Source of the DNA: Macrostomum lignano | Lineage: Eukaryota | Direction: 5' to 3' | Length of the DNA: 64,000 nt | Assembly (NCBI GenBank): GCA_002269645.1 | Contig: NIVC01001170.1 | Location: 1-64,000 of the forward strand | Shown: positions 1 to 59,500 of the stretch, in pieces | Layout of the letters: each line of letters begins with the position of its first letter | Numbering within the stretch: position 1 is the stretch's first letter | Program-made: the position numbers and the translations under genes | Notes under the pieces: generated by a model | Databases searched by the model: none | What the model saw: the letters and a program-made list of their open reading frames with translations, nothing else | What the model was told of the DNA's origin: nothing

Positions 1-2053
1 GGGGGATACTTCCCCCCCCTCCCTACGCCATTGTTTACAGCTGCTGGAAACTAAAACTACAACGATTATTTGCTCTCATAATTTGTAAAATTTTAAACAT
101 GTAGGGCCTTGCCCTTGGGTCTTTGTGGTTCACTATTTTACGACAATTTATTTATGTCGTTTTCAAAAACACGTTTTCTAAGACATGGTAAACAAAAGTC
201 TTTCGCAATTGCAATTTCTGAAACGTCAATCTAAATATACTAAATCTCTAATATTTGTATGCTTGTAAACTACTAGTCTTCACCGACCGTCGATGTATCG
301 ACTGCTGCCAGTTATTAGTTAACCCAAATAACATTGATGCAGCAGGGATGCAACTGTCACGTTATTTGACGTTGGCCGTGACCCTTAAAAGGGCCGTTTT
401 AGTCCCAAAATAAGTTGAAGTCAACTTAGGCGAAGTGGATGGTGTAGCGGAGCACTTGCGATAAGGCAGGAACTGCCGTAGTTGTCTTTATTGTTAATAT
501 CAGTATTAAGTTTGGTTGTTACTGGCAATAAACAGACTATAGCTTTCTGGGCACTGGCGGCTGCAACAATGGGTTGAATATAATTTGGATATGAAGTCAA
601 GTGGCAGCGAATGACACAATGGCGACGTGACGTGAGCAGTGGCTATGAGCACAGTGAAGGCAGTGAAAACGTAGTGGCGAGTTTGGCGTCGGTCGTGGCG
701 TGAGACAGTCAAGTAAGTGTGTGAGCAGGCTGGCCCAGGCAGAGGGGCCGTGGTGAGAAATAAGGAGGCTCGAGCAGCCAGACAAACAGATAAGACAGCT
801 AAGAGGCAGCAGGGAAGAAAACCAAGAGAGCGAGAGGAGTGTGGAGTGCCCGCCGCCAGGCGGGGGTTTAATAAAAGAGCGCAGAGGGGGGTAGCGCGAG
901 CAACGAGTGATTTCATTGGCTGGCGAGAGAACTTAAAATTATCGATCGTGCCAATTTTATACGGTCGCGAGAGAGGATAGCAAAATATACAGTGAATTAG
1001 AAATTTCCACAAAATCGTTGGCATTACTACAAGTAAACGTCGCAATAAACGAATGGAAAAGTTTAGTTGAAACGGTGAAACTGAAGGGTTGAAACTATGG
1101 AGAAACAGTAGTCCAACGGCCCTTTTCGGGACCACCTTAAACTGACAACGTCACACAACGCAAGTTTTAGCGACAGAAATTTAACATGGACAAATTCGTC
1201 GAAACGCGAAAGCAAGCAAATTAGGCGATAAGTCTTCGATATAGCCAAAGTTAAAGCAAATAAAATTTAAGGTTTTCTTAAAAAAATTCTAGAAAGCTAA
1301 TGAATGACCTCTGATAGAATAAAATGCTTTCGATCGAATTGAAATATATTGGATATTGCGTTTCTTTGAGAATAAACAAAGCATATCTTGACCTTGAGAA
1401 GCACATTTATTTAGGAAGCATGCAGATGCACATCAGAAATAATGGATAGGCCAGTAGGCCTAAAGTAAACTTGATTAAAATGGAAATTTCGTCTGACTAG
1501 GCCTAATACCATTTGTGTTGTACTGAAATAATTAGTGCCTATACTGTATACATACACTAGTATACACAATTGTTCTTCCTTCATTGTTGCCAGATTTGAC
1601 TAAGCCTAGGCCTAGTTACTAGATTGTTGCCAAATTTGTCCATGTCCATGGTGAATCTAAATCTCTAATGCCAAATTTTTGTTTGTTGCCAAATTGGTCA
1701 GCACCTACACTTACAGTAGGGAATACAAATTTGCAAATATTGGGCCTAATAGGCCCTAGTCCTATTCCTAAATTCTGACACTAAGCCTGTTATTTCAAAG
1801 GCCTATGCCCTTGCCCTTGGGTTATAGTCCTATGCCCCTGCCCTTGCTTGCCCTTAGCTTATTCAAAACTAGCCTATACCCTATCTTGGCTATCTAATTG
1901 AAATTGCTAAATAGGCCTATTTATTGAATTATTGACTATGCAATAACTAACTTACTTACTAAATAAGTAACGTGTAACCATAGTAAGTGCCTAAGTAACC
2001 TTAAATGCTTTGACCTTAACCTTAAATTAAGGTCTAACATGGTTAAAATTTAA

Positions 2054-2807
2054 CTAACTAACTAACTAAATAAATCTGGCACCTCAGCCATTAAAAGGCT
2101 CTTATGTTACTAGAAATAATTGGGTTCTAGATTGGGAGTGTACAAATGTACACAAGGTTTCTAAGCTAGAAAGAGTGACTGTGGCCAATAAGCTAAGCAG
2201 GCAACACTAGTTGGGCAAAAGGTGGGCCCTACCCTTGCTTTCAGGGCATTAAGCCTACTCCAAGCTCAAATCAAAACCTCCCTAGGGCCAGAGAGGGTTG
2301 AGTGAACCATTCAGGGAAGCCTGTGCCTTCTCCAAGGTTAGAAATGCAAAAAAAACAGTCATAAGACCGCCCCCATAGCCATGGCAACCCAAAGGTGCCT
2401 TCCCACCTACTAAACCTGGTAGGCCTACTTTTGCCAGACAGTCTCTTATCTTTGAAGCGGCAAGAAGGCTAATCGCTGGGACTATTTCACCCTTTGCTTC
2501 ACCAACCCACTATTTTTATAAGGCCATGCCAATGGCCCGTCCTAGTTAGACTCAGTCCTGGTTCTGGCACATTCCAGCTTTAATAGAGTTGCTGGCTGTT
2601 TGCTCAAAGGACACTCCAAGGGAGACAGATCATCAGAGCATCAACTGGAACAAGTATAGGCCTGCCTTCCTATACAGCTACCCACAGCCCTTCCTGATTG
2701 ACTATTACCCTCCAACCTAGCCTACTAACTCATTATAAGCTTTCAGTTAGGCAGAGACAGGTGTCACAGGGGTACTGCAGTTAGGCATCTCTATGCGAAA
2801 CAAAACC
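2054..2807. mobile_element. Degenerate interspersed insertion with 18-bp direct repeats and a (CTAA)n end
   Basis: AACATGGTTAAAATTTAA is identical at 2036-2053 and 2808-2825. CTAACTAACTAACTAAATAAA follows the left copy. This resembles a retroposed copy with a TSD; the family is not recognised. Confidence 0.55.
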
Positions 2808-3169
2808 AACATGGTTAAAATTTAAAATTCTTATTGGATATAAGACAGATACTATATAACTAGATAGTTCACTTAGTTAATTTACTCTTAGTTATACTAC
2901 TCTTAGGACTAGCTATTAGTAGCCTAATAAAAATAGCCAAAATAAAGAATCAATTTTGCAAATTTTATAAAGTAGGCCTAGTTTTTTGATAGCAAGGCCA
3001 AGGCCATAATTTGATATTATTATTATATAATTTCAAATTATATATAATTTGATTTTTGATTTTAAAAATAAAATAAATAATATAATATATAATAATATAT
3101 CAAATTCTACTTTCATATATTTATACTGGTATTGTATAAGCTAAAGGCTAAGGAATTATCCTTATAATA

Positions 3170-3760
3170 TAGGAGCTTTTCCTTCTTAAAAGCTCCTTTA
3201 AGAGTTGCATCTTAGACATCTTCTAGCAATAGCTTATAGCACCTGAAGAAGATACATTGTCACATACTAGTTGGCAATCATTGCTATGTTTCTAGTAGAA
3301 TAGGTCCTATCTATGACTAGACTGCTATGAGCCACAACAATAGCCATTACTGCTTAGTGTTGCTTTGTGACTAGACCAATTTTAAAGGCAGCTCTGCTTT
3401 TTACAGGGACCCATTGCAATGACTGCTGTTTACTTTCAAGGTCAAAGCTGTGCACCCAAATCTTGTCTCCACTGATGACCTCCCAGGTGCTTGTTGACCT
3501 GCCTTTATCAAATATATCTAGCTGGGCTTGATACCAATGAGCCTCAGCTTGCTTTTATGCCTCAGTCAGGTAATGAGGCACTTAGCACGCAAACACCTTA
3601 CTTAGCTTGAGCTTTTCATGCAAAATGCTCAACATACTTCCCAATGAAATGTCAATAGCATTGGATAACTATTGCACTATTGATTGTGGATCTATGGGGA
3701 TCAATGCCTGCACTGCAGCCATATTTGCATCAGTTGTTAAATAGATACCTCATGCCACAA
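3170..3760 (-). pseudogene. Decayed mariner-type transposase
   Basis: The minus strand reads LHEKLKLSKVFAC*VPHYLTEA*KQ..WEVISGDKIWVHSFDLESKQQSLQWV. This corresponds to mariner WVPH(E/L)L, TGDETW and YDPE..QS..W motifs, with several stops. Confidence 0.75.
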
Positions 3761-5348
3761 TGCAGGTCAACTTGTTGAAATGTGCATTGCATACTTTCAA
3801 ATTGCACTTTTGAATTGCTATAGCCTGTAAGCTCTAAATCTAGCTCCAGAAATCCTTTCTATCATCCATTGAGTAACCACCACTTCATCTGCCAAGAATC
3901 TATGCATTGCACTAGACTTCTAGTATTGCTAATGCAAGTGTATGCTTGACAGTTTGAGCTATTTGTGCAAGTGGCCGTATAATCTTTGAGCTGAATATAG
4001 AATTTTGCATGACCATAGCCTATGAAAACTATTTGATTATATATATGATTGCAAATCATACTAGAAAAATTAAATGCATGATCCGTGTAGACAAGAAACT
4101 AGGCTTTACCAAATGCTCTTAAAGCAAACAAAGACAAACACTATACTTATATTGAGATTGGTTCATAGACTGCATAGTGTGTATATTATGGTTTATATAG
4201 CCTCCTTAACCCTTTTACCACCCTTTTATCCCCTTTCTGTGTGGCTTTGTTGGTTGGATTTTACTAAAGTCAAGGTAGTGAAAAAAGTTCTGCTTAGCTA
4301 GATGGCTTGTACAGCCCTCAGCCTCCACCCCTTCACCCTCTCCCCCCATTCAAACTGCTATAAGCTAGCAATAAGGTTGAAAAAGAAAGCATTTAGTGGA
4401 AATTTAGGCACAAAAACCTAGCTTAAAGTCAGGAATATACATTGTTTAAATGATTGAAAACTTCATTTCTTATCAAGTTAATTTTAATCACTAACAATTA
4501 TGTTTCTTATAGTTTGCATTTACACTACTATCCTAAGAGTAGTATTGTTTTTTAACCCTCTGTAAGATGGGGAATGACCTATCTACTTATATAGTATCTA
4601 TGGCAATATAAAAATAAAGATAAATAGTATATAAAAGGCAAGGGATAGATCTAGAGGGGGCCATGGCCAAAAAATTTTTGGGCTATAGTGCTTGGTATAG
4701 CTTGTCTTGCCCCAAAAAAATTTTAGATTGGTGCCTAATAGAAGGACACTAAGAAAAGGCAGAGGCATGTAATATAGATAATTACTATTTTTGTGGGAGA
4801 ATTTGTGTTAGTCATAAGATCTTTAGCTCTAGCTAATCAATACCAAATATATATGGCTACTAGACATTTCAACTCTAGTATTTATACTCTCTTATTGTAT
4901 TTCCATTCTATAATTTCCCCTTGGTGGCACGTACGAGTAATCTGTGCATTTTCTTTGCATCTATAAAAACAAGAATAAAATTGGGCACATTGACATAGCA
5001 CTCCAACGAACAAAAACTCCAGCAGAAAATATTCAAAAATGTTTTAAAAAATGTTCAATCAATTTGAAAACTATTGGTCTGGCAGTGGCACCAGTGCAGA
5101 CCCCAATGTCCAGTCTGCCAGCATAGCAACCAGCAAGTCTGTCCGGCCAAGCCGCATGTCCACGTCGGCTAATGCCGCAGGCCTAATGAGTCCCTGCAGT
5201 CCAAGTCAAAGCGTGCACGAAGGCCTTGCTCACTTTGAGCACCTGCAGCAGCAACAGAGAAGCGATCCAAATACACTTCCCACTGTTGGACAGTGTCCAG
5301 CCACGGCACAATGGACCGGGGTCTATCAGATATTGTCGAACTGCGTAG

Positions 5349-8507: not shown

Positions 8508-8567
<60 letters not shown>

Positions 8568-44414: not shown

Positions 44415-45688
44415 TTTTTTTATATTTGTTTTTTGATCACTCTTTTTTATTTTATTGCATTTATTTTATACTTTTTTTTCATGCATCCACTTTATAAAGT
44501 TTGTTGGTACTTAGTTGATTGTGTTTATGAGATATTTGCCTTGTCTCTTAGCTATGTGTTGCATATACTTTAACAACAATAAATATAAAGAAACTAGTGC
44601 AAAGATAACAAAGGAAAAGATAGTTTTTTCATCGCAAGTCAAAGAGAACCCTAACTCTTGACTTAATCATGCTTTAAAAAGCTTAGTCCATATAGCCATA
44701 TATTGAGAAGTCTTCTCTTCCAATATTTAGAGAAATTAAATTATAATTAACTGATTAGCTATGCTAAGGCAAAAAATGAATTGCATTTTTGGCAATCTCT
44801 TACTTTACTACATTAAATTGTGATTTTTTTCATTAGGTCATTATGAGATTGTTATAAGTATTAAGCAAGCAAGTCAATAATAGTTTGCCACCTAGTAGAG
44901 AAAGTTGCCAAACTCTTTCCCTAGAAAAGGCAGCACAATAGATACTCATTCAATTGGCTCTCAAATAGCCATATAGTTATTTTGCAAGCTATTGTAGGTC
45001 CACAATATGTCAATTATTATGTAAATGCTAAACCTAAAAACAAGAAAACTAAATAACTTAACCACAATGAGACTGATGGCACAATTTTGTGCCAAGCAGC
45101 AAAACTGCCCCCAACTAACACCTGGCCCAGACTGGTGGATTAGAGCAGTCAAACTCTTTTCATGACTGCTCTTCTATACCACCACACCTATTCCCAACAG
45201 CTTGGTTTGATATCATGCCATGGAATTTTTTAGTTCAAGTTTTTAAGCTTGTATACAAACTTCTTGACTGAAGCAACTTTTCAAGTAGTCTTTGCCAAGT
45301 AGATTTTGACACACAGCCCTAATGTTTCTACCAGTGCAGTCAAACTTGTCTTTAGCCTTATAGCATTGTATTACTAGCAGCATTGTACTTGGACGAGCAT
45401 AGTATAAATTAAATCATAAGCTCTGAGTCTGATTCAGAGACCAACAATGTGACAGAGTCCCCAATAGTTATGATGATGAGTCTCTAAGTGACTATGAAGA
45501 GCTGTATTTAGACATACATGAAGAACAGAACCTTGTAGTTCCACCTGGTAATTGGGTGCTTATACTCTGTTTCATACCTTTATTGCATTTTTTCAAACTC
45601 TTGAATAGTTATACTGTTGCAACACCAATATATCAGGTCCATCAACATATGTTTTCTGGCTCTCTTGGTTTTCACATTATTTATACAA

Positions 45689-45842
45689 GCGCAACCTTGG
45701 GAATCACCCGGCTGTTTCTATTGGCAACACATGCATGTAAGTCGCTATTGGCTGAGAGTAGTCACGTGACTATTATTCCGTTTAATAGCAACTTACATGT
45801 GTGTTGCCAATAGAAATGGCCAAGTGAATCCCAAGGTTGCAC
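45689..45842. mobile_element. Palindromic MITE-like element, copy 1
   Basis: The arms GCGCAACCTTGGGAATCAC..ATGTAAGTCGCTATT fold back around a central GTCACGTGAC. It is homologous to 52267-52422. Confidence 0.8.
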
Positions 45843-48134
45843 CCAAGCATGACATTATTTTTACATGTTTTTTTTATCAAATATATACATAATTCCCCAT
45901 TATTTATTACTTTTTTTCAAGTAATTTTTATTACAAAACTTGTTCTTTATATAATAATAATTAACTTAGGCTTTACTAAAACTAAACATACTCTTACCAA
46001 GAATTTTTGCTATAAGAGCATACTCTGTTTATAGTAGCATCTATCTTAGCAATATAATGTATAGAATTACATTTGCTTATATACTTAAACTATATCCTAG
46101 CCTATGAGTCTATGACTAAGGCTATGAAAAACACTGAAAAAGTAAGTCACTTTAACAACAAGACAATTTTAGACCATTTTGGTGAATGTTAGGCCTAGTA
46201 TATAGGGATTGGGCTCTGTATTATTTGTGATATGCATGTGCTCCTTATTTATGGCTCATACTCTATGCATATATCTGCTTTATTGTGACTTTAATATGCA
46301 CTATTATTATGAGTTTTTAGCTCTTGAGTTAGGGTGGCTACTATTAAACCTCACTTATAATGAATTGTACTAGATTGTTTTGTCAGTGCACTTGGCTCTT
46401 TTGTCTTGCCTTGCATACTTTGCTTTCAACTTGCTCTATTTAATAGTGATTCTCAAAATACATGGTCATAGACAATTATATACCCAATGGGAAAAGGGCA
46501 GCCTTCAATTTTTTAGTCCTTTTTGATGCTAGTCTTAAAAATAATCTTTAGCATTGAAAGATAAACTACAATGTTTCTATAAGTTAAAAAGTCATTTAAA
46601 CAAAAATTCTATCAGCATATCTATATTCAGTTTTGGAAGGCAATCATTTAAATGAATTGATATACATAATTGATTTCCTATATGCTAAAAATTTGTTCTA
46701 AAATTATAAAAGAAAAAGTAACATTTTATCATTTTTTCACTCTCTTAGCAAACAATTTATTCTGCAAATATAAGTAGTGCAATTTTGGTGTGAAGAGTGT
46801 GATTCAATAAAATAGGTGCTTATTGAGTAGAGTAGGCCCTAAGTGTTCTACAAAGTAAAAAAGATAGATTGCTGAATAGAAAGGATTTCCTAGAAGTAGA
46901 CATAAGCTGTTGCAACCAAAATAGGCCTAGTGTAATACAGATATAGTATTAAGTCAAGATAGACTCTAGGTAGTACTAATAAGCCAGAAACCCCTTGGTC
47001 AATTGGTCATTGGTAATGCCATGTTGGACTATAGAAGTTGGTGATTAAGACTAAGGCCTAGTAGTCAGCAGTATCTTATCGCCTAGGCACTGAAGCTACT
47101 AAGGTAAATCATACTGACAATCAATAGCTTATACATAGCCTATGTTACAGCTATGTATGTAACAGGTAGTAGGCCTATATTAAGGCAAAAGAGGTAAGAT
47201 ATGGTAAAGTAGGAGACTTAGTAGGCCTAATAGCAACTTGGTACTGGTGGGATTACAATTACAGAAGATAGAAAAATTTCCCTGTAACAACTTGGTGGCA
47301 TTTTAGTGGGATGTACATGTATCAGAGAGAAGAAATAGATCTAGAACAAATAGGTAGTATTAAGCCTAGTGGGATATAGACTAACTACTAAGATATTATA
47401 TAATCCTACAACAAATGCCCTACTATTCTACCAGTACTACCAGATTCTACCAGAAACATCCAAATAAAGTAGGTCTAAGAAACGCCTTTAATACCTCAGG
47501 CTCAACAAAATTTTATGGTTTAGGCGGTAGGCCTAATTCACAGCACACCCTTGCCATAAAATTTTTAGGCCCTAATCAAAAAATGAATTGAAAATTTACA
47601 ACATAGGCCTAGTTCTTATATGAAACTTGCTACCTAGGACCTATCATTAAGTAGGCATAGCCTAGACTTAAGTCAACCCCTATTACTAGTATCACTAGTA
47701 TCACTAGACAGGGACCCCTATCACTATTACTAGGCCTACCTGCCTAGCAAAGCAAGCTCCCATACATAGTCATAGGCCCCTATATTGAAATTAAAAAAAT
47801 AAAATAATTAATGAAGAAAAAAGTAGATTCTGTAATTTTAAGTCACTATTCGCTAACTAGATCAGAGATTCCAATGTACACGGTACACAAAATTTGGTCA
47901 ATTACAGGATGTCTCGGGTGCACGTAATCTGACTCATCCGGAAATTAAAATAGATCGGTTAAAACACTTTAAAACAAGTTAAACACATGCAGGTACGCAT
48001 GAGTTTTGTCGTTCTTTCTTTAAAGTTTGTTCGCACATCCTTTCAGAGCATATCAATTCATGCTTATTATATTATTCTCACTTGTTACCGACGTGGCTGT
48101 TACCGAAATGGCTGTTACCGAAGTGGACTGTTAC

Positions 48135-49990
48135 CAGTGCTGGGCAAGTTAATCAATTTTTTTAACTCGTTAAAAGTTAAAAAGTTAATTTAATTGCTCC
48201 AAAAAAATTAACTGTAACTAGTTAATTATTTAACTTTTGCCCAAAATTTAACTTCTGAAAAGTTAAAGTTAATAATTCTCTAACGGAAAAAGTGACATTT
48301 TCCCGGACATGCGTCCGGCGCGTTTTTTAAATTTCAGGTCGGCGCGGCGCGGCTGTGGCCAGGTCGCGGTGCGGCGCGCCGCGCCGCGGTGGCGCGACGC
48401 AGCGCAGGAGGTCGTTCGGCGGCGCGGGAAGTCGCGCGGCGGCGCGACATGGCGCAGAATGGTGCAATGCGACAAGGAAATATCTATGCAGCGCGACGCG
48501 GAGCAGCGCAGCAGGGAAGGCAGAATTGCAACTACATGTATACAACTAGGGATGTCGACCCCGGCAGGGCTCCCCGGGGCCCCGGGGAGCTTGTCGGGGA
48601 ATACTCCCCGGGGAATTAGACCGGGGACCCCGGGGAGAAAAAAGCATTTTTAACTAAATTTTTGCCATTTAAATAAGAAAATCATTCACAGAAAGCTGAT
48701 TGAAACTCTGTCTATGCTTTTTTTACCGCAAAACTGCTTATTTCAATGTATTATTTCAAACACAACACACGTTTGAATGGGGGGGGGTTCATAAGACCGA
48801 AATTTCACAACGCCGAAACACCATACTTCACAAGACCGAAACTTCATAAGATCGAAATTTCACATCGTAGAAAACCTTACAATAAGGATTGTATTGCATG
48901 CAGAATTTTCGGCGTTGTGAAATTTCGGTCTTATGAAGTTCGGTCTTGTGAAGGGTAGTGCTTTTCGGCGTGTTGTGAAATGAGTCTTTCAATCAAGCAA
49001 ATTGAACGTACGAGCGTAGAAAGCCGTCAGGAAAAAGAAGCCTTACTGACTGTTGTGTTGGTCTGCGTTGACGGCTTGACGCATTTGACGCAGGCACAGC
49101 GCTGTATCCTGCGTCAGTCACTGACGCATAGGGGGTGTCATACAATAACAAAATACTCCCTATTAGACAGGACAAAATGGTGATTTAGATGTATCTGCAA
49201 GAAATTAAAATTCCGATTATAAAAACAGTCTCATTCATTAATTATCCTCCCTCGAGTGCAGCTGCTGAGTATGCATTTTCCGCCTCCGGAGTCTGGACCC
49301 TTTCTGATAAAGGTGCGCGCACGATTTGGTGATGCCATATTGTCAAATACAGTTTTAAACAAACATTGCCTTAAGTTTTTACCCTTGCGCCTTGAACATG
49401 TAGTCCATCCAAAGCTTTAATCAAAGTTTAAGAAATGCCACTTAGTGACTTAAGATCTAAGTCATCCGCCGTTTTTTACTTCTTTTTTCCCCGGAGTCCC
49501 CGGGGTCCCCGGGGAATGGCAGTAAATTACCCGGGTCCCCGATAAGAAAATTCCCCGGGGAATCGACATCCCTATGTACAACGATAACTTCTAGTAGTCC
49601 TTGGGTAGAATATCAATAGATAATAATTGAAGATTCCAGAATCTTCCGGAATATTCAATACATTATAACTTGTAACTGAAATTATATACATGTAATAGTA
49701 GTTTGTGACGCGTTAAATAATGCTTAGAAAGGCGAAGTTATTTTATGTATGTATTAATTTTACTTTTTAATGGCATACAAGCTGTTGAAACCCGCGGATT
49801 TTGACCCCGGGGAACTCTATTTCCCGGAATTATTAACTTTTGTCATTTAACTTTAACTTACAGAAAAAAATTAACGATTTTTGTTAACTAGTTAATACAT
49901 AAAAAATTTAACGAAAATTTAACGATTTTTAAAAAAATTTAACTAGTTAATTAACTAGTTAAACAATTAACTAGTTAACGCCCAGCACTG
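48135..49990. mobile_element. hAT-type non-autonomous element (outer)
   Basis: TIR CAGTGCTGGGC..GCCCAGCACTG; perfect 8-bp TSD ACTGTTAC (48127-48134, 49991-49998); subterminal TTAAC repeats. Confidence 0.9.
48547..49574. mobile_element. hAT-type non-autonomous element nested in 48135-49990
   Basis: TIR TAGGGATGTCGA..TCGACATCCCTA, an Ac-like TAGGGATG start. The TSD matches 7/8 (TATACAAC / TGTACAAC). Subterminal CCCCGGGG repeats are present. Confidence 0.85.
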
Positions 49991-50519
49991 ACTGTTACCG
50001 TCTAGCCCTTGGCCTAGACTTTGACTTTAACGTCAGCTGACCAGTAGAAAATTATATAAATTCAATCAAATTTATGAAAATGCTGTTGTCAAAAAGGTCT
50101 AGCAGAGAAAATATAAAAAAAATATTTTGTTCAAGTCTATATGCTCATTGAATTTTTTATACATTTGCGACAGTTAGAAACATAAACACTTTGTTTTACC
50201 CAGTTTTTGTTTTTTGTGCTATGCATTCTGTTTTTAAATTTTATTTAATTTAGACTTAGCTGAAAACACATGCACGTTCAGAGGACTTAGCTGTCTGCTT
50301 ACTCTGCTATCTGAAAGAAATAAAATTTTCTAGAAGTAAATTTAGCCTTACAAACGCTACGCTGGTGACTAAAGCTTTTTTGCATATTACTCTTTTTGCC
50401 GTGACAATTTGTAGCTTGTGAACTAATATTTTACTGTAAAATATAAGGCCCGAAACCGAAGGCCCAGGCCTTTTTCGCTATATCCTCTATTAAAGCACAG
50501 AGTTAATTATAATTTTACA

Positions 50520-53500
50520 ATGCCCTTTAAGTTTTTGAAGCAGCTTAAGGTGGTTGAACTTAAAGAGAAGTTGTATATACGCAAGCTTGATGTGTCTGGA
50601 AACAAGGCAGATCTTGTTGAACGCCTACGAAAGGTATTAAATCCTTGATTAGGCTAGGCCTTTTTCTTTCCTGTTTTCGTAGTTTTATATTTGTACATTA
50701 ATTGCTCGCTTTATTGTCCTTTTAATGCTAGTCTACTGGCTTTTAGTTAAAAAATAGCAAAAAATTAAGAGTTAGGCCAGCATTATCTAGCAAACTCATT
50801 GTCTTAATCTCTTAGTTTGATCTGTTAGTTTAATCTCTGGATTATTTTTAAAAGAGCTTTTCTTGATTGATATTTAACTACTGTATTCAAAGTATAGAAG
50901 GATTTCCATGCACAACTGAAGGTAAATTTTAGTTTTAGTCTCTTATACAATAGGGGGCCTAGTACAAGTCATAATTTTACTTTGGCTAGGGGCCTATGCA
51001 ACAATCCACAATACACAAAACAGTTCATAATAAACTCATTTTGTTAGGCCTATCATAGTTATCCCTAACAATATTTCACTTTTATTCTAGCTATAAGTTT
51101 AAGTGTTGATTGAATTTAAAAATATCATTACATTATACAATACAAAGCCAAAGGCAGACTAAAACAAAAAGTGCACCAATGCAGTTTAATAGAATGGTGC
51201 ATAATACTTTCAATAAGACTATTGTATTTTGCAGTTTTTATACTTATACTATAGAAAAAACATGTCTAAGACCAGGATGGAATTCTTACACAAAAGTTGT
51301 TAGGCGTTTGTGCATACTTGTCAAATTCATGCTCGCTGGTGCGCTGAAAAGGAGCCTACTTGCATGCTCTTAAAAAAGGTGTGTGTGTGCTCTATCGTAT
51401 GCACTTGCAAAGAAGTTGTTTGCCATAGAATCATAGACAGGATTTGACTTTAAATGCATTTAACATGGTTATATGCCATGCCACACTCCAGATCATATAG
51501 TAAACGGTGTAAGACCAAGATGGCCACACACCAAGATGGCCACAGCTGGGGTGGGGGTCACGGAGAATGACAACTGGTTTTCTATTGGATAGCTTCAGGT
51601 GGGGAGATGTGGGGTTGCAATGGGGTGGGGGTTTAGACAGGCAGTCAAAATTTTATTAGTATATTGCAAGGCTAAAGACAAAAATGGTTACGAGTCTTAA
51701 TTTTCTACTTATAGTAGGCCCCTAAAAGGTGTAAACATATTTCATATTAAACAAATCTCTTCTTCATATAAAATCTGGTGTAGCTTTTTTTTCCATTTCT
51801 CTTATTGGTCGAGACTAATTTACTTGTTTAAAGGGATAAAAACTGGGTAAATTTCATGCCCTGTTCAAAATTCATCTGTCTCATTCACTGACAGCAGTCT
51901 AAGCACTTAGATACAAAATGGCAGGCGCATATCCATGTGTGGTCTGTCTGCAGCCAGTTTGCGATGGACAAGAAGCAATTGAGTGTTCTCAATGCTTGAA
52001 TTGGCAGCACCGTGCATGTGACAGTCGCGTCACGATCGATCGGTATTCTGCATTGAGAAATGTCGGTGAGTTTTTCTGGCTTTGCAATCAATGCAATAGA
52101 TGGGCTCCTGCAGGTAACTTAGCAGTGTCTCAAGCTGCAGATGCTGCAGTGATACATGTACAAGCCCCGAATTCTGGACCAGCGGCTGTTCCTCTGCCTG
52201 CTGAAAATCCAGAACCAGTGCATTTGATTCCGGCACAAGCAGAAAATTTTCTTTACTATCATACGTGCGCAACCTTGGGAATCACCCGGCCATTTCTATT
52301 GGCTACACACACATGTAAGTCGCTATTGGCTGAGAGCAGTCACGTGACTACTATTCCATCCAATAGCGACTTACATGTGTGTGTTGCCAATAGAAACGGC
52401 CGAGTGAATCCCAAGGTTGCGCCCAAGCATGTTTACTATTTTACTATCTTTACTATCTTTAATAGCATGACACGGCCTTCACACATGGGGGCTCCAAGGC
52501 CTCCATGCTCCTTCCAGTGATTTTTTTAGAATAGTCTTTGGCTCTTAGCAAAGACAGCACACTGCCCCCATCCACCAGAAGGTGCATGGGTGGGCACATT
52601 CTCGATTGGATATTTTACAACAAAATCTCTCCTGCGTTGCCTTCTAGCTGGCCTCAGCTGGTACAAGTCGGGCACTTTTTCAAACATAGGCTTCTTTCCT
52701 ATGTTTGCTATCTATCTTTCCTATCTTTCCTTCTTTCCTAAGGGGAGAGAGTGGAGACCAGAGATAAATGAGAAGAGAGAGCAAAGATGAAAGAGAAGAG
52801 AGGTGAGGGAAGATTGACAAGCGAAGATGGGAGAGAGGAGATAGGAAAGAAGAGAAGAGAAGAAAGAGAGAAGAGAGAGAGAGAAAACAAAATAGAAGAT
52901 AGAAGTTTCAAAGGATCTGAGGGACATAGAGAGAGACAAGAGGCCAGAGATTTTGCCAATACATGTTTTCAAAAGATAAGTTTTTGTTTGACAACAACAA
53001 CAACAGAGTACGCTGCCAGTTCACAAAAGCAGCGTCAGATGGCGCGCTACAAAGCTTGGGCGCGAATAAAAGCCGCACCGCCGGCAGAGTCCGGGGCGCC
53101 GGCGTCAGCCAGCAGACAGTCGACGTAGCGCCAAGTCTTCGCCTGTCCCCACCGGTAGGGTGCCTGCAACGTAAGTAGCAGCACCTCCTACACCGGCTCC
53201 GGACAGTAGGCCTCGGCGCGGATGACGTGGCCTGCCAGCTGGTGTCACCGACGGCGCAGCAGATCGCTAGGACGGGCCAGGCTGGCGCGATGATAGAGCG
53301 CTGTGTTGGTGACTCGCTTGTTGCCGATCTTGAAGGCGGCGCGCAGCAGGCCAGCGTGCGCCGCGTCGACTTGAGCCTCGAGCGAGTCTGTCAGCGTCCA
53401 GGTCTCGGCATTGTATAACAGGACAGTCTCGATCACCGCCTGGAACAGCGCCGCCCTCTGGTGGTCCGGTAGGGCCTCGGACTGCAGGACTGACCTTATA

Positions 53501-56500
53501 GAACGAAAGGCAGCCCAAGCAAGTCCTCGGCGACGCCGCAGATCCTCGCGGACGTCGGGAACCAGACCGCCAAGGTAGACGAACTGCTGACATCTTGGAA
53601 GCTCACTCGCCTGTCCGTCAGCGCCTTGGCAGAAAATTGCAGCCTCGGTGTCGTCCGGCACGCATAGCACGACGGTCTTCTGCATGTTGACCACCAGGCC
53701 GACGCTTGCCGCAACGGCAACCAGCCTATCCAGCTGTCGTTTGTTTGAGTATGACTTCAGATTTTAGAACTAGATATAAGCTGAGCTGAGAGAGAAGATG
53801 AAAGTAGAGGCTGAGAGTAGAGAGAGGCTGAGAGTGGAGAGGCCGAGAATAGAGAGGTTGAGAGTAGATAGAGGCTGAGAGTAGAGAGGTTGAGAGTAGA
53901 GAGGCTAGTTCACATTGTTCTCAATCCCATTCCACTATACATGTAGTTTTTATCTAATGTGACTAAGCCAGGTGCTTTTAGTGCAGGGGTTGGCAAACTT
54001 TTTACCTCGATTGAGAACCTAGCTCATGACTGCCCTTCTATAGTCTGCTTCGTTGGCCCCCAAAGCGAAGCGAGGAGTCCTGATGACAGCAGGCCAGAGG
54101 TGAGGAGAGAGGGTAAGGAATAGAGAAGAGAAATACAAACTAACAAACATAGGATAAAGGAGAGGCAAAGGAATAAAGGAGAAGAGAGTTGATGAGAGGA
54201 GAGATTAAATATGAGCAGAGAGAGATCAGAGGAGAAGGGAGATTAATGGAGAGGAGAAAGGTGGGAAGGGAGAAGAGAATGAAGAGGAAAAGGGAGATGA
54301 GAGCAGAGGTGAGGAGAGAAGAGAGGATAGAGATGAGGAGAGAGGAGAGGAGAGAGGTGAGGAGAGGAGAAGGCAAGAGATGGGAGAGGAGAGGGCAGAG
54401 ATGAGAAAGAGAAAAGATTAGAGACGAGAGAGCAGAGATAAGAGAGAAAAGATAAGAGACAAGAGTGTAGAGATGAGAGAAAAGATCAGAGAAAAGAGGG
54501 CACTCCAATTTTTGCTTACTTCTATCATAACTAATACCTTTAACCTCTACCTTTAACTTTTAACATATACAAACAACACGTCAGTTTTAGTATATTAAAG
54601 ATAGGTTTGAAACTATTATCCATGGTCCAAAAACCAAATGTATTGTGCTAGTAGTGCTACTAGCTTTAGTAGGTAGTAATACCTGCTGTAAAGGGAAGTG
54701 TTTTTTGTTTTACTTAGTCTAATTTCACTAACGAAATATGTCTTCTCCGAGACTTGAAGCTAGGTCATACCCCACCCCAATCACAGCCAATAGGAAATGA
54801 GGAAATATATAGACCTATTCCTATCCAAGCAGCCATTCAGAGCTGTGGCCATCTTGGTGTGTGGCCATCTTGGTCATGTGCCTAGTATATGCCCAAAAAT
54901 TCGGGCATGCATTGGCCTTGCACACCAAAGTTAGGCATGCACAGTTGGCGTGCATCACTCCTGAGAAAATAGTATGCGTGCACACCTGGCGTGTACTTTA
55001 TAGAATCACGGGTAAGAGTTATTGTAAAGTAGAAAAAAGATGAAAAGAGTTCATTTTCAAGCATAAATTTCAAGCTTTCCGGTTTTTTCCAGCTTGTAAA
55101 AGACTATTTACACAAATTTTTGCCTATATAAACTTTCCGCTATAAATAGTATCGCCAAAAAAGCTTTAGAAGCAACAAAATTATCTATCTAATATTAAAG
55201 GTCTATTATGCAATTTAAAAAAAGGAAAAAAAGGTTGTTTATTGTCACAACGTAAAAAAAGGTATTTTATTATTGCAACACCGGCATATTTTTGAGAATG
55301 GGCGTGCACTAAATTTTTTTTGGCATGCATTTGTAATTATTCAATTTTTGTTCGGGCGTGCACCCAGCATGATCCAGAGTATGCATGCCATATAGTGTAT
55401 GTGCGCTCAAGTTCTACTTTTCATAGTCTGGAAGGTTGTGTTTACGCTGGAAAATTTTAAACAAAAATAAAACAAAGAATAAAAGTTTTTAGCAAAAAAA
55501 GTTACTTTGAAGTTTAGTGAAACTCTTATAATTTTTAAAGAATATTTTCTCTAAAAATTATAGTGTTCAAGCTACTATACACTTAAAGTATAACTTTCTA
55601 ATTTATGTCGGCATAAGAATTGAAAAACTAGAAATTTCATTTTTTAGCATATAGACCCACCATGCTCTGTATCATGATTTTTTACAGCTAGCGTGTACAC
55701 TGCTCGTTTTCCTACCCCAAGCAAGAATTCCATCCTGGGACTAAGATATATTGTAAATTTCATTATGCATTCTGATATAATTAAGTATTATATAGTATAC
55801 CATATAAAAAATTTAGAACAACTCTACAATCAATGTACAAGGGGTGTCCCAAAAGTCTATGCAAAGTCTTTTTGTGACTACACTGGCTATTTACCAAAAT
55901 CATACATGCCCAACTTTGAAATTTCACCTAGCTTTGCAACTTACTTTGTGACCAAATATGCAACTTACTGATTAAAGAAGCTCTACTAAAGCAAAAATTA
56001 ATGTGACTTGTGTAACTATGCATTATTATCATGAGTATATTATTAAGTAACTATGACTATATTTTAGGCTAAATTCTTTGTCATCTAATTAGTAGTACAA
56101 TGTCTACTTTTTTAATTTTGGGTTAGCATTTTTGTGACTTACATTTGCTAGACCTTTTGTGCCACCTAGCCAAATTGGCCAGGTCAGCTAAGTGTTAGGC
56201 ATGTATGACCAAAATGGTCTTTTCTTATTACAAAAATGAATATTATTAAAAAGAAACATCTCACTAAAATCACAATAATCCTATTGGAAAGGTTAAGTAT
56301 TTGACAAGTCAATAGTAGTATGCTATCCAATCACTCTTATTTGGTTACCAAACACTTATTTGAAAAAAGCAGTACTATAAAATTTTTTATCAAGTAGCTA
56401 GCTTTCAAGTTTCAAACATGGCATCAGAGATGTTGTGTATCACCCTGCATTTGGCCTTGGCCCTTGATATGGGCCCAAGACACCCCAATAAAATATCATG

Positions 56501-59500
56501 TTGGTACTGACCATTGGGTTGTTGGGGTCCTCAAAATAGAGTCAATAATTTAGAGTGACAATATATTAGCCAAACATTTATCATTCATATATAAAATTTG
56601 TTTTGGTTTGCTGAATTATAAAAATGTTGCTTAGAATCATTAAGTCATTTTAAGCTACTCTATTGCAACCCATAGATTAATTTAACAATTTTATTATAAG
56701 ATGTGTTATTGATACTTGGTTAAAAGTGTCCCCTTAATTTAATGCCTTCAATTTGTTATTAACCTGCAAAATTTTAGAACATGGAAGAAAATGGCGAAGA
56801 TGCTAGTGAATACCAGTTTGAAATTGAGACACGCGGTAAGATTATTGATTAATGTTTTTCTCACACTTTACTTGTTATTAATTAAGGCGTAACTGTGCGA
56901 AGTGCAAACGTTATGAAAACTTCACCTTTCTATTGTTTTATTTTAGATGGCGATAATGCCCGGCTAAATGATTCGAAAAAAGAAGATCCACCAACAACTA
57001 TAGAGTCTGACATCTACTCAACTGACGTTGTAGACTATGTTGATGTGAGTAGTGGGTTATATGATTTTTTATTGTTGTAGCAGCAGTTTACTTTTTTATT
57101 GATAAATGAGTTATGGCGAGACTAATATAATATTCTCTTAAACTTTGCAGGACGTTCAGGAAGAGTCTGGTGGTAAGCAATCATGTTTACATTCTTATTT
57201 GCATCGTCAGCTTTCATCTGCACTCCCTTATCCTTCAGTGAAAGCAGAGTGTCCCTAATTGAATCCCGCAGTTGAAAATTTGTCAGAAAAAGTTGCAACC
57301 GAAGAAGACGGAGACAACGATTCTATGGCCGATGCTCACCTAGCGAGTCAGCAGGATGAGGAGCCGCAATTGCAGGAGTCTGGCAACGCGTCTAGCATCG
57401 CTAAAGATGAAGATAAACAACAAGAAGATGAATCTGCAAGCGCCGCTGAAGTTCATTCAAACGCGATAGTGTCAAAGCCGGTTTCAACTACTGCCGCTGA
57501 GGAGGCTTCGCTAGAGGTGCACGTTGAACAAACGGACGATCTCGACGAAGATTTGGCTAAGCATCAACGCTTGTCGTTGTCTTCTGCGGCTAAAAAGAGT
57601 CAGCAAGCTCATAAGTGGGCTTCTAAATCTAATGGGTTTGTAGTTTCGTTTTGTCTATTTTTATTGATGACTTTGCTGCATCTTAACTATTGTTTTGAAT
57701 AATTTATTAAAAATTCCACTTTGCCAGCTCCGCTTCCGGACAGTCTTCTGCCGCTTCTAAGTCTAATGCTGTACCCGCGTCTAAAGGTAAGTCGGCAAAC
57801 TATTGTTTAATTGTGAAACGGCTTCCCTTACTATACGAGTTACTGATGACTGCAAGTTTCAATTTGTGGCAAGTTTGTTTAAATGTTGAAAAATGGCGGG
57901 ACGGGGGGTCTGCTGTTGCAATATGCAGCCTACAACTGATTCGACTGCAGCACGAATTGTCAAACAAAGACCGAGTCGACTGCAAGCCAGGATCTACTAC
58001 AGAGATTCAATCTGTTCGACTGCTGTCAGAGCCTACTAACTCCGTGGACATCTAAATTGATCTTGGGTTTTATTTCTTTTGGTACATAACGATTTCAGTC
58101 GACAGAACCATGGATTAAACAACAATAAAGATCATTGGTCTTGCACTCCAGTTATTGTGGTATATGTCTGTGCTTCAAGTCAAGAATCCGCAGTTCGAAG
58201 CAACAGCATTAAAGAGGATTAGAAAACAAATAAACAACTGATCCTTGGGCACCATAAGTATTGTGGTAATAATGTTTTAGGCCCAAGTTTCCACAGCTCA
58301 AATCGAGAATATTCAAGAAGAACAAAGAACTTAAAGCATTGATCGTGGGATCCAATTCTTGTGGTAATAATTTTTATTCAAGTTTCCACAGCTCTAATTG
58401 ACATGATAACAACAAGGACAATCTGCAACTATTAAATCAACGCTTTGTTGCGCATGTCAAGTCTTCAAAGTAAATAAATTGACGAAACTTATTGCTCTGT
58501 CTTGTCTTTGAGTTCGAAACGTCGGTAAAAAAAGACAGGAAACGCTGGGGAAGAAAAACTATTCGCCCAAAATATTTAAATTTCGTTCTTGCAGACAGCA
58601 AAAGCCTGTGGGTTAGCAACATCCACAGCAGTACAAAGGCCGTGGATCTCAAACAGCTATTTAGCAAGCACGGCAAAGTTCTCGCTGCTAAAATTGTTGT
58701 CAACGCTAAAGGATCCAATCAGAAGCGCTACGGCCTCATACAGATGTCATCGGCTGACGAGGCTGACAAATGCCAGAAGAGTCTGCACAAGACTAGCTTG
58801 CATGGTCGGACAATCTACGTTGACCGGGCCAATTCGGAGCCATCTACTACTAAAAAAGCAGAGTCAGCATCATTGACTACTACTAAGTCGTCTTCATCAG
58901 CGGAAGCGACTACCGACGCGACTAAGTCTGCAACCACTGGCTCGTCGAAGTTAGAGACGACATCGACGACAAAGACTGCCGACAATAAGCCAAAGCCCGG
59001 CGTTATCAAGTTGCCAATTACGTCGTTCTCTTCTAACCAGGAGTCGGCGCGGACAGCGGCGGCTTCGGCTTCAATGTCGCGCGGCGGCAGCGGTCCGATC
59101 TCCAATTAGCGGACGCGCCGGCAGCGCCAGAAGCCGATCGAGGCAGCGTCAGCAGCACGGCCGACCGTCTACTGATCAGCGCCGGAGCGCCGGTAGCGAT
59201 CGTCGACGCGGTAGCGCCGACGGCGCCGGTAATATTAGTAGAGTCCCCAGTGCTTTGCAGGGTGATCGGCGACGGTCCAGCGGCGGCAGTCGGGACCGCA
59301 ATAACCGAGGACGAACTGCCAGCAGTCGGGATCGGGACAGTCGGGCGCGGACAGGAACAAGTCGGGACAGACTTGCCGAGGCGCATCATCAGCATCGACC
59401 TGGCGCTCACACGTCTGCCCGGTCTAATCCTCCGCGAGAGCGGCGCACCTCGATGGAGAATAGCGGAATCCGGCGCCAAGCTGGCGCTCCTAGTTCCGGC

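What the first reader, a model, noticed from the sequence alone, without database searches (positions are those of the whole stretch)
1440..56750. Multi-kb C>T/G>A hypermutated domains (CG>TA) at the 5' ends of broadly expressed genes: a possible 'inverse CpG island' or RIP-like process
Seen: about 1.4-4.95, 43.7-47.9, 50.1-51.9 and 54.6-56.7 kb are nearly CpG-free and rich in TAG/CTA. I count roughly ten CpG in 1.5-4.9 kb, whereas neighbouring exons are CpG-dense. These domains sit upstream of RASSF exon 1 and around the first exons of SYAP1 and SAFB. The 5' flank of the adhesive gene (36.3-37.3 kb) keeps its CpGs. Established: 5mC decay gives CG>TG/CA; reaching TA needs a second, non-CpG deamination, as in fungal RIP. 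Inference: a localised germline deamination or methylation process acts near these promoters, opposite to vertebrate CpG islands. I do not know of this being described in flatworms.
Basis: partly seen in the sequence, partly recalled or inferred. Interest (0 to 1): 0.8.

Follow-up and report, generated by a model that had tools for sequence, protein, structure and literature searches.

The report
CpG-free blocks beside flatworm gene starts
Several 1-5 kb stretches next to the first coding exons of three housekeeping-type genes of the flatworm Macrostomum lignano have lost almost all their CG dinucleotides by C-to-T mutation in place, most likely the scar of local germline DNA methylation, which would show where this animal puts its little-studied methylation.

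Summary
A two-state segmentation finds near-CpG-free blocks at 1364-5143, 43044-47846, 50709-51922 and 55447-56780 (CpG o/e 0.10-0.22, P 1e-8 to 1e-39). Neighbouring exons and other non-coding DNA sit near 1.0. The blocks are 20% of the window but hold 2.2% of its CpGs.

The loss happened in place. Copies of two MITE families inside the blocks lost 20/20 and 5/8 CpGs by C>T/G>A on both strands. Sister copies outside lost 0-1. Within SYAP1, the ATG exon has o/e 0.10 and later exons 0.93-1.06.

The window is Macrostomum lignano: it encodes the Mlig-ap1 peptide [14 protein letters not shown]. Reviews say this species keeps DNMT1 and DNMT3 and has low-level 5mC of unknown pattern. Best explanation: regional germline methylation followed by deamination.

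The RIP-like reading fails, because the process follows region, not repeats. The "promoter" claim is untestable here because TSSs are unknown. The CpG-normal islands inside 43-57 kb are mostly young TE insertions.

New: the palindrome TAGGCCTA occurs 14 times, all inside these blocks.

The parts
1364..5143 (.). CpG-poor block 1, directly upstream of the RASSF ATG (5051). GC 37%, CpG o/e 0.10. It contains a mariner-like fossil.
   Evidence: HMM segmentation: 13 CpG seen, 130 expected, P=3e-39. Sequence read. RASSF exons.
43044..47846 (.). CpG-poor block 2. It covers the 5' 0.7 kb of SYAP1 intron 1, the SYAP1 ATG exon and 3.9 kb upstream. CpG o/e 0.21. Many of the residual CpGs sit in two younger MITE copies.
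43784..43951 (-). SYAP1 ATG exon (MLSSVKNWWG...), lying inside block 2. One CpG, o/e 0.10. The later SYAP1 exons (42361-42897, 41034-41792) have o/e 1.06 and 0.93.
47851..50707 (.). CpG-normal island between blocks 2 and 3 (o/e 1.21). It is 1.85 kb of young TE plus about 1 kb of native DNA that includes the SAFB SAP exon (about 50520-50633, plus strand). Candidate unmethylated bidirectional promoter.
48136..49987 (.). Young hAT-like non-autonomous transposon. TIR CAGTGCTGGGC, intact 8-bp target duplication ACTGTTAC. It carries a nested MITE at about 48548-49577 (TIR TAGGGATGTCGA). It also carries the very CpG-dense stretch 48300-48500.
   Evidence: Read directly from the sequence. CpG profile.
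50709..51922 (.). CpG-poor block 3 in SAFB intron 1 (o/e 0.22). Its right part runs into the inverted-repeat-bounded composite.
51513..54875 (.). Composite insert bounded by a perfect 35-nt inverted repeat (51513-51547 / 54841-54875). It holds a PHD-finger ORF (51918-52520), a hairpin MITE (52261-52431), AG-rich low-complexity DNA and a CpG-normal LINE fragment.
53245..53694 (-). Open 149-aa ORF that reads like the C-terminal part of a non-LTR (LINE) reverse transcriptase. It lies inside the CpG-normal piece 53011-53844 (o/e 1.01). The LINE identification rests on my reading of the translation, not on a profile search.
55447..56780 (.). CpG-poor block 4 in SAFB intron 1 (o/e 0.10). It contains an old MITE copy that has lost every CpG.
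41923..42184 (+). MITE copy (termini CATACATGC...GCATGTATG) in CpG-normal SYAP1 intron 2. It keeps about 20 CpGs and serves as the reference for polarising changes.
55896..56208 (-). Copy of the same MITE family inside block 4. All 20 CpGs aligned to the 42-kb copy are destroyed, including CCGG>CTAG twice. Differences read from the 42-kb copy to this one: C>T 21 and G>A 27, against T>C 8 and A>G 6.
44242..44419 (+). Partial copy of the same MITE family inside block 2. About half of its aligned CpGs are lost.
45683..45851 (.). Hairpin MITE copy inside block 2. It has lost 5 of 8 arm CpGs (CG>TG or CG>CA). The sister copy at 52261-52431 has lost 1 of 8.
3357..3700 (-). Mariner-like transposase fossil. 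The only PDB hits are Mos1 transposase chains, and the match is weak (E=0.26). Its conserved W and Q codons now read TAA.
   Evidence: No Pfam hit.
1455..2980 (.). Cluster of 6 exact TAGGCCTA palindromes plus 8 one-mismatch variants. It sits at the end of block 1 that is far from the RASSF ATG.
46190..47738 (.). Cluster of 7 exact TAGGCCTA palindromes plus 4 one-mismatch variants. It sits at the end of block 2 that is far from the SYAP1 ATG. One more exact copy lies at 51045.

Best explanation
The blocks are the mutational footprint of regional cytosine methylation in the germline of Macrostomum lignano.

How it works, as inferred. DNMT1/DNMT3 keep a few sharply bounded 1-5 kb stretches methylated. 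These stretches flank the 5' coding ends of RASSF, SYAP1 and SAFB. 5-methylcytosine deaminates to thymine on either strand, so CpG decays to TpG/CpA roughly 5-30 times faster than other sites change. A weaker excess of C>T at CpA then moves TpG/CpA on to TpA. The end state is AT-rich, CpG-free, TAG/CTA-rich DNA whose surviving C and G sit in CC, CT and GC contexts. Everything lying in a block decays: unique DNA, old TE fossils and even the SYAP1 ATG exon. Recently inserted TEs are still CpG-rich.

Shown here: the depletion, its sharp borders, its origin by mutation in place, its strand symmetry, and that it follows region rather than repeats.

Inferred: that methylation is the cause, that CpA is co-targeted, and how the blocks relate to transcription start sites.
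For: 1. Depletion is extreme and local: o/e 0.10-0.22 against about 1.0 in flanking exons, introns and intergenic DNA.
2. Mutation happened in place and depends on region. The MITE copy in block 4 lost 20/20 CpGs, while its sister copy in SYAP1 intron 2 keeps about 20 and lost 0 of 5 testable sites. The hairpin MITE in block 2 lost 5/8 arm CpGs against 1/8 in its sister copy.
3. In that younger copy, the per-site transition fraction is 5/18 at CpG positions, about 6/64 at other C/G and 3/80 at A/T.
4. Both strands are hit equally. C>T is 21 and G>A is 27. GC and AT skews of the blocks are within +/-0.09. This argues against a single-strand deaminase or a transcription-coupled process.
5. Coding sequence follows the block it lies in. 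The SYAP1 ATG exon has o/e 0.10 and GC 44%. Later exons have 0.93-1.06 and GC 56-62%.
6. The dependence on the 3' neighbour (CpG far above CpA) is what DNA-methyltransferase-dependent deamination gives. The CpG + 2.5x CpA model reproduces TG/CA, TA, CT/AG and CC/GG of block 1.
7. The organism is M. lignano. The Mlig-ap1 antibody peptide [14 protein letters not shown] is encoded in the ORF at 25398-33647. Reviews state that it retains DNMT1 and DNMT3 and has low-level 5mC.
8. The blocks hold only 2.2% of the window's CpGs. Methylation confined to them would read as 'low global methylation'.
9. A small outside hint. The distal 400 nt of the promoter fragment of the ubiquitous EFA gene has o/e 0.45. 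The four tissue-specific promoter fragments have 0.83-1.16.
Against: - No methylation data were available here, so the cause is inferred from sequence.
- The classic vertebrate-type footprint, a TG/CA excess, is absent. TG/CA is 1.07-1.14 and TA about 1.0. Plain CpG decay does not fit without an extra CpA term.
- In the old MITE copy, C>T is as frequent at CpT (13/30) as at CpA (9/31). The CpA preference therefore rests on the composition model, not on direct counts.
- GpC o/e of 1.45-1.55 in the blocks is reproduced by neither model.
- 3' exons of the same broadly expressed genes are not depleted, unlike canonical invertebrate gene-body methylation.
- The TE comparisons use two families and few sites. 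Part of the asymmetry could reflect different insertion ages.
- The primary bisulfite paper (Wasik 2015) could not be read.
Confidence: 0.6

Rival explanations
1. Age alone. CpG is hypermutable everywhere in non-coding DNA of this genome. The blocks are simply the oldest DNA, and everything that is CpG-normal is young (recent TEs, tandem repeats) or under constraint.
For: The CpG-normal islands inside 43-57 kb are largely young insertions. One is the hAT-like element with an intact 8-bp target duplication. Another is a LINE fragment with an open 149-aa ORF. CpG loss in TE copies scales with their divergence. The blocks contain old fossils.
Against: Ancient conserved exons (SYAP1 BSD exon, SAFB RRM exon, RASSF RA exon) have o/e 0.9-1.2, which selection on coding sequence is unlikely to maintain (my inference), while the SYAP1 ATG exon has 0.10. 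The 42-kb MITE copy is 19% diverged from its sister copy in block 2. Yet it shows no loss at the 5 CpGs that can be tested. Block borders do not coincide with recognisable insertion ends.
Confidence: 0.13
2. A RIP-like or other enzymatic hypermutation. A DNMT-like or APOBEC/AID-like deaminase hits these regions in bursts and converts CG directly to TA.
For: CCGG>CTAG occurs twice in one old MITE copy. The bulk deficit of CpG equals the surplus of TpA, with no TG/CA build-up. A model with CpA co-targeting fits. TpA/ApT is 1.0-1.16 in the blocks, against 0.81-1.08 in controls (derived).
Against: The process is not triggered by repeats. A sister MITE copy at 42 kb and the hairpin MITE copy at 52.3 kb are spared. 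Unique exons are hit. Young repeats inside the blocks are intact. (CpA+TpG)/(ApC+GpT) is 1.2-1.4, above the RIP cut-off of 1.03. The younger TE copy shows only single-step CG>TG/CA. There is no strand-coordinated clustering. The context dependence is on the 3' neighbour, not the 5' neighbour as for APOBEC/AID enzymes (established knowledge).
Confidence: 0.07
3. A regional AT-biased mutation or repair regime that does not depend on methylation. Examples are chromatin that is poorly repaired, or a lack of GC-biased gene conversion. CpG would be lost as a side effect.
For: Non-CpG C>T/G>A is also about twice as frequent in the block-4 MITE copy as the reverse change (26/95 against 14/98). GC content is 8 points lower in the blocks than in control DNA.
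Against: A context-free AT bias cannot bring CpG o/e to 0.1 while GpC o/e stays at 1.45-1.55 and CC/GG and CT/AG rise. CpG positions mutate several times faster than other C/G positions in the same copy.
Confidence: 0.08
4. An assembly or sequencing artefact.
For: None found.
Against: The blocks contain intact splice-flanked exons, TE copies with ordinary structure and a specific over-represented motif. Non-CpG cytosines are retained, which excludes bisulfite-like conversion.
Confidence: 0.02

Closest known systems
Mosaic germline methylation footprints in invertebrates: the low-CpG o/e class of methylated gene bodies described in Ciona, honeybee, oyster and annelids. The comparison rests on my own knowledge and on the background section of PMC11292947.
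   Same: There is a sharp mosaic of CpG-depleted and CpG-normal DNA within one genome. Depletion is linked to broadly expressed genes and absent from a tissue-specific gene (Mlig-ap1). The organism has DNMT1 and DNMT3.
   Different: Depletion covers only a 3-5 kb block at the 5' coding end, or upstream of it, and leaves the 3' exons at o/e about 1. By my recollection it is much deeper than the 0.3-0.6 typical of methylated invertebrate genes (o/e 0.1 here). There is no TG/CA surplus.
5'-biased gene-body methylation of holometabolous insects (bees, wasps, ants). From my own knowledge.
   Same: If the TSSs lie in the CpG-normal DNA at 1.4 kb or below and at 47.85-50.7 kb, each gene has an unmethylated promoter. 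A depleted block then covers the first 3.3-4.6 kb of the transcription unit.
   Different: In insects the signal is mainly on 5' exons. Here it is mainly on intronic or intergenic DNA, and whether the blocks are transcribed is unknown.
Bulk vertebrate genome outside CpG islands.
   Same: CpG o/e is 0.2 or below through 5mC deamination, and unmethylated islands keep their CpGs.
   Different: By my recollection vertebrate DNA has TG/CA about 1.2 and TA about 0.73. The blocks have TG/CA 1.07-1.14 and TA 0.88-1.09. Here the depleted state is the exception (20% of the window), not the rule.
Fungal repeat-induced point mutation (RIP).
   Same: C>T/G>A on both strands, dependence on the 3' neighbour, AT-rich and TpA-rich products, and stop codons made from Q and W codons.
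   Different: RIP targets duplicated sequence wherever it lies. Here the target is a region, repeats outside it are spared, and unique exons inside it are hit. The CpA-depletion index is not met.

Membership tests
Methylation-driven CpG-depleted domain (5mC deamination footprint) | CpG o/e far below local expectation, with sharp contrast to the flanks | tested here: met
   o/e 0.10-0.22 against about 1.0. Poisson P from 1e-8 to 3e-39.
Methylation-driven CpG-depleted domain (5mC deamination footprint) | Loss occurs in place by CG>TG/CA transitions, symmetric on both strands | tested here: met
   Two MITE families were polarised against sister copies outside the blocks: 20/20 and 5/8 CpGs lost. 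C>T 21 against G>A 27. Block skews within +/-0.09. Sample is small.
Methylation-driven CpG-depleted domain (5mC deamination footprint) | Compensating excess of TpG/CpA | tested here: not met
   TG/CA o/e is 1.07-1.14 in the blocks and 0.90-1.17 in controls. TG+CA per kb is unchanged. A CpG-only model predicts 1.32-1.40.
Methylation-driven CpG-depleted domain (5mC deamination footprint) | The organism has maintenance and de novo DNA methyltransferases | not testable with these tools
   The window holds no DNMT gene and the genome could not be searched. Reviews state that M. lignano retains DNMT1 and DNMT3.
Methylation-driven CpG-depleted domain (5mC deamination footprint) | Residual CpGs of the domain are methylated in germ cells | not testable with these tools
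   This needs bisulfite, EM-seq or nanopore data. The primary paper was not held.
Canonical invertebrate gene-body methylation | Depletion extends over the exons of the transcription unit of broadly expressed genes | tested here: not met
   Only the SYAP1 ATG exon is depleted (0.10). SYAP1, SAFB and RASSF downstream exons have o/e 0.91-1.47.
Canonical invertebrate gene-body methylation | Promoter/TSS unmethylated and CpG-normal | tested here: inconclusive
   TSSs are unknown. CpG-normal DNA lies at 1-1359 and 47851-50707. However, TATA-like strings sit 80-90 nt upstream of all three ATGs, two of them inside or at the edge of blocks.
Repeat-induced point mutation (RIP) | Mutation targets duplicated sequences irrespective of location | tested here: not met
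   MITE copies at 42 kb and 52.3 kb are spared and copies inside blocks are hit. Unique exon sequence is hit. Young TEs inside the blocks are intact.
Repeat-induced point mutation (RIP) | RIP indices: TpA/ApT at least 0.89 and (CpA+TpG)/(ApC+GpT) at most 1.03 | tested here: not met
   The first index is 1.0-1.16, but controls also give 0.81-1.08, so it does not discriminate. The second is 1.22-1.39 in the blocks (derived).
APOBEC/AID-type editing | Specificity for the 5' neighbour and strand-coordinated clusters | tested here: not met
   The dependence is on the 3' neighbour, with CpG far above the rest. C>T and G>A are balanced and there is no skew.

The most novel reading that the evidence does not exclude
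M. lignano builds an 'anti-CpG-island' architecture. Sharply bounded blocks next to housekeeping gene starts are methylated by DNMT3 in both CG and CA contexts and so decay all the way to TA. The blocks are seeded or delimited by clusters of the palindrome TAGGCCTA. This word contains no CG, CA or TG, so it survives the decay. That would be a sequence-specified methylation domain of a kind not described in animals.
Probability: 0.12. Interest if true: 0.8.

Novelty: new variant of a known kind. Interest (0 to 1): 0.5.

Why it matters
Free-living flatworms are the one part of the phylum said to have kept DNMT1 and DNMT3. A 2022 review states that the genomic pattern of their methylation is unknown.

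If these blocks are the methylated fraction, they give exact coordinates to test. They also explain why global 5mC looks low, because the methylated DNA has almost no CpG left. And they suggest a layout that differs from the gene-body pattern of molluscs and annelids: 5'-proximal blocks, with 3' exons spared.

The spectrum, with no TG/CA build-up, hints at non-CpG methylation or another C>T route. The TAGGCCTA clusters give a candidate cis-element.

If bisulfite data show nothing at these blocks, an unknown region-specific mutational process would need explaining.

Tried and rejected
- A protein search with the SAFB RRM ORF found nothing at E<=1e-10. I took this to mean that M. lignano is not in that collection. 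I therefore spent no further large searches, and no homeologous locus or other genomic copies could be fetched.
- Pfam on the three minus-strand frames of block 1 gave no family. The mariner fossil is supported only by a weak (E=0.26) hit to Mos1 in the PDB, the only protein matched.
- Rfam found nothing inside the blocks.
- A self-BLAST of the blocks found no similarity between blocks 1 and 2. They are not copies of one element.
- The idea that the very CpG-dense stretch 48300-48500 is the shared promoter island was dropped. It lies inside a hAT-like transposon with an intact target duplication.
- The idea that TA gains track CpG losses by flanking context was tested and failed. GCGC>GTAC is not seen; r=-0.34.
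- TAGGCCTA as the deaminated form of a common CpG-bearing word (YRGGCCYR) was rejected. No such progenitor is frequent elsewhere in the window.
- A literature search for TAGGCCTA gave only primers and unrelated bacterial sites among the top-ranked papers.
- Wasik et al. 2015, the primary bisulfite data, is not held.

Full report
**What is there**

The window has GC 46.9% and an overall CpG o/e of 0.875. Per kilobase, CpG o/e drops to:
- 0.06-0.12 at 2-5 kb,
- 0.00-0.40 at 43-48 kb,
- 0.30-0.52 at 50-52 kb,
- 0.28-0.60 at 54-57 kb.

Most other kilobases lie between 0.8 and 1.4. CpG-free gaps reach 846 nt in the first block and 1301 nt at 45779-47080.

A two-state HMM on 'C followed by G' gives these poor segments:
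- 1364-5143: 13 CpG seen, 130 expected, P=3e-39.
- 43044-47846: 30 seen, 142 expected, P=4e-30.
- 50709-51922, 52422-53004, 53875-54942 and 55447-56780.

Three other poor segments are tandem repeats whose unit simply lacks CG. Excluding those, the blocks make up 20% of the window and hold 68 of its 3080 CpGs, or 2.2%.

**Organism and genes**

The 2749-codon ORF at 25398-33647 (minus strand) is a lysine/arginine repeat protein. It contains [14 protein letters not shown]. That is the peptide used to raise the Mlig-ap1 antibody in Macrostomum lignano (PMC6410801). EGF and TIL domains lie next to it, as described for Mlig-ap1.

- RASSF is on the plus strand. Its ATG is at 5051, and its RA and SARAH exons are at 8.8-11.5 kb.
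- SYAP1 is on the minus strand. Its ATG exon is at about 43784-43951, its BSD exon ORF at 42361-42897 and its 3' exon ORF at 41034-41792.
- SAFB is on the plus strand. Its SAP exon is at about 50520-50633 and its RRM exon ORF at 58.5-59.1 kb.

So block 1 ends about 0.1 kb before the RASSF ATG. Block 2 covers the SYAP1 ATG exon, 0.7 kb of intron 1 and 3.9 kb upstream. Blocks 3 and 4 lie in SAFB intron 1.

**The depletion is mutational and arose in place**

Two small transposon families have copies both inside and outside the blocks.

Family 1 has termini CATACATGC...GCATGTATG.
- The copy at 41923-42184, in CpG-normal SYAP1 intron 2, keeps about 20 CpGs.
- The copy at 55896-56208, in block 4, has none.
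- The aligned sites read CG>CA, CG>TG and, twice, CCGG>CTAG.
- Over 299 aligned columns, reading from the 42-kb copy to the block-4 copy, there are 21 C>T and 27 G>A, against 8 T>C and 6 A>G.
- Transition fractions by context are 22/40 at CpG positions, which destroys every CpG, then 9/31 at CpA, 13/30 at CpT, 4/34 at CpC and 14/164 at A/T.

Family 2 is a hairpin MITE.
- Aligning its four arms shows that the block-2 copy (45683-45851) lost 5 of 8 arm CpGs, all as CG>TG or CG>CA.
- The sister copy at 52261-52431 lost 1 of 8.

Within SYAP1, the ATG exon inside the block has o/e 0.10 at GC 44%. Its later exons have 1.06 and 0.93 at GC 56-62%. GC and AT skews of the blocks are within +/-0.09. The process therefore acts on whatever lies in the region, on both strands, with a strong preference for CpG.

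**What the CpG-normal islands inside 43-57 kb are**

- The stretch 48136-49987 is a hAT-like non-autonomous transposon. It has the inverted ends CAGTGCTGGGC and an intact 8-bp target duplication, ACTGTTAC. It carries a nested MITE at about 48548-49577. The very CpG-dense stretch 48300-48500 belongs to this transposon.
- A perfect 35-nt inverted repeat (51513-51547 / 54841-54875) bounds a composite insert. The insert holds a PHD-finger ORF, the hairpin MITE and a CpG-normal piece (53011-53844, o/e 1.01). That piece contains an open 149-aa ORF that reads like the C-terminal part of a LINE reverse transcriptase. The LINE reading is my own and was not confirmed by a profile search.
- After removing the hAT element, about 1 kb of CpG-normal native DNA remains (47851-48135 and 49988-50707). 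It includes the SAFB SAP exon.

So 43.0-56.8 kb is essentially one depleted region. It is interrupted by younger, still CpG-rich insertions and by one short native CpG-normal piece.

**The spectrum**

I compared the blocks with 18.4 kb of CpG-normal non-coding DNA from the same window. Per kb, the blocks have 39 fewer CpG, 37 more TpA and unchanged TG+CA.
- TG/CA o/e is 1.07-1.14 in the blocks and 0.90-1.17 in controls.
- TA o/e is 0.88-1.09 in the blocks and mostly 0.71-0.91 in controls.
- CT/AG and CC/GG are raised by about 0.2.
- TAG/CTA o/e is 1.37 in the blocks and 0.80 in controls. CAG/CTG falls.

I then ran forward simulations.
- With CpG transitions 30-fold faster and nothing else context-dependent, TG/CA is 1.32-1.40, TA 0.78-0.93, CT/AG 1.11 and CC/GG 1.04-1.11. 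This holds at every time point, including equilibrium, where the starting sequence no longer matters.
- Block 1 shows 1.10, 1.09, 1.26 and 1.31.
- Adding a 2.5-fold higher C>T rate at CpA gives 1.05-1.13, 1.08-1.15, 1.23-1.26 and 1.19-1.22.

But the TE copies show that the route is stepwise. The younger copy has only single steps, and the old one has about 9 single steps and 2-3 TA. The direct counts do not single out CpA over CpT. Neither model explains the GpC o/e of 1.45-1.55.

**Mechanism**

Three features together point to methyltransferase-dependent deamination: dependence on the 3' neighbour, strand symmetry, and targeting of a region rather than of repeats. They do not fit an APOBEC/AID-type enzyme or RIP.
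- The RIP index (CpA+TpG)/(ApC+GpT) is 1.22-1.39, above the cut-off of 1.03.
- Repeats outside the blocks are spared.

Reviews state that M. lignano, unlike planarians and parasitic flatworms, retains DNMT1 and DNMT3 and has low-level 5mC. [quoted passage not shown] If only the blocks are methylated, about 2% of CpGs would be methylated. That fits 'low-level'. I could not read the primary bisulfite paper, so methylation at these blocks remains an inference.

**Relation to promoters**

This cannot be settled here. TATA-like strings lie 80-90 nt upstream of all three ATGs: TATAAAA at about 4962, TATATATATTATAAA at about 44025-44037 on the minus strand, and AAATATAAGG at about 50440.

That gives no single rule.
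- If instead the TSSs lie in the CpG-normal DNA at 1.4 kb or below and at 47.85-50.7 kb, one rule fits all three genes. The promoter is unmethylated, and the first 3.3-4.6 kb of the transcription unit is depleted (3.4 kb, 4.6 kb, and 3.3 kb after removing the insert).

In the second case the blocks could be first introns, or outrons, since 39% of M. lignano genes are trans-spliced (PMC5730564). That would be a 5'-restricted form of ordinary mosaic methylation rather than an inverse CpG island.

One small outside hint comes from the distal 400 nt of published promoter fragments. The fragment of the ubiquitous EFA gene has o/e 0.45. The MYH6, ELAV4, APOB and CABP7 fragments have 0.83-1.16.

**An unexpected motif**

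The palindrome TAGGCCTA occurs 14 times in the window, against 0.96 expected. None of 100 shuffles reached 14.
- All 14 copies lie inside the blocks: six at 1455-2980, seven at 46190-47738 and one at 51045.
- The two clusters sit at the block ends far from the ATG exons. Copies are somewhat denser towards those ends.
- The flanks differ, so these are not copies of one repeat.
- No CpG-bearing progenitor word is common elsewhere in the window.
- One-mismatch variants cluster in the same two places.
- The word contains no CG, CA or TG, so it would survive the inferred decay.

Its role is unknown. A binding site or a boundary element is a reasonable guess. The top-ranked papers from a full-text search for the word showed only primers and unrelated bacterial sequences.

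**Verdict**

The finding is real. It is best read as the footprint of regional germline methylation in a flatworm that kept its methyltransferases. The layout (5'-proximal blocks, 3' exons spared) and the spectrum (no TG/CA build-up) are unusual. RIP-like hypermutation is not supported.

Noticed in passing
1455-2980, 46190-47738, 51045: The palindromic 8-mer TAGGCCTA occurs 14 times against 0.96 expected, and every copy lies inside a CpG-poor block. The two clusters sit at the block ends far from the ATG exons. The flanks are unrelated and one-mismatch variants co-cluster with the exact copies. The word contains no CG, CA or TG. Its function is unknown.
   Followed up: partly
48136-49987: Young hAT-like non-autonomous transposon with TIR CAGTGCTGGGC and an intact 8-bp target duplication ACTGTTAC. 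It inserted into a 15-mer array (TGTTACCGAAGTGGC). It carries a nested MITE at about 48548-49577, rich in CCCCGGGG, and a very CpG-dense stretch (39 CpG in 200 nt).
   Followed up: partly
51513-54875: A perfect 35-nt inverted repeat (GACCAAGATGGCCACAC...) bounds a 3.4-kb composite. The composite holds a PHD-finger ORF (51918-52520), a hairpin MITE, AG-rich low-complexity DNA and a LINE RT-like fragment (53245-53694, minus strand). No clear target duplication was seen.
   Followed up: partly
12811-12940: An Rfam hit to Vault RNA (50 bits, E=4e-8) overlaps a tRNA-model hit (46.5 bits). It could be a vault RNA gene or a tRNA-derived SINE, in CpG-normal DNA between the RASSF 3' end and the Mlig-ap1 repeats at 15 kb.
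   Followed up: no
5400-12110: The RASSF introns are filled with at least five different tandem arrays: a 22-mer x52, a 35-mer x20, a 22/44-mer x13, an 8/15-mer TCCCCGTC x75-150 and a 41-mer x10. Some units are CpG-free and some are CpG-rich.
   Followed up: no
15200-36300: The large minus-strand gene is Mlig-ap1, the cohesive adhesion protein. The window shows K/R-repeat arrays of 30/33-nt and 60/93/153-nt units, EGF/TIL exons and the exact antibody peptide [14 protein letters not shown]. Its exons, introns and 5' flank are CpG-normal.
   Followed up: partly
37835-37921 / 39320-39406: 87-nt inverted repeats, 98% complementary and 1.4 kb apart. This is probably a young DNA transposon in the CpG-normal Mlig-ap1/SYAP1 intergenic region.
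   Followed up: no
24849-25070 / 63755-63974: A dispersed repeat of about 220 nt, 81% identical, in inverted orientation. One copy is in an Mlig-ap1 intron and the other near the window end.
   Followed up: no
External: PMC5730564, Supplementary Data 1: The first 400 nt of the published EFA (ubiquitous) promoter fragment has CpG o/e 0.45 and 19 TAG/CTA. The MYH6, ELAV4, APOB and CABP7 fragments have o/e 0.83-1.16. This points the same way as the finding, but it is one gene and 400 nt.
   Followed up: partly
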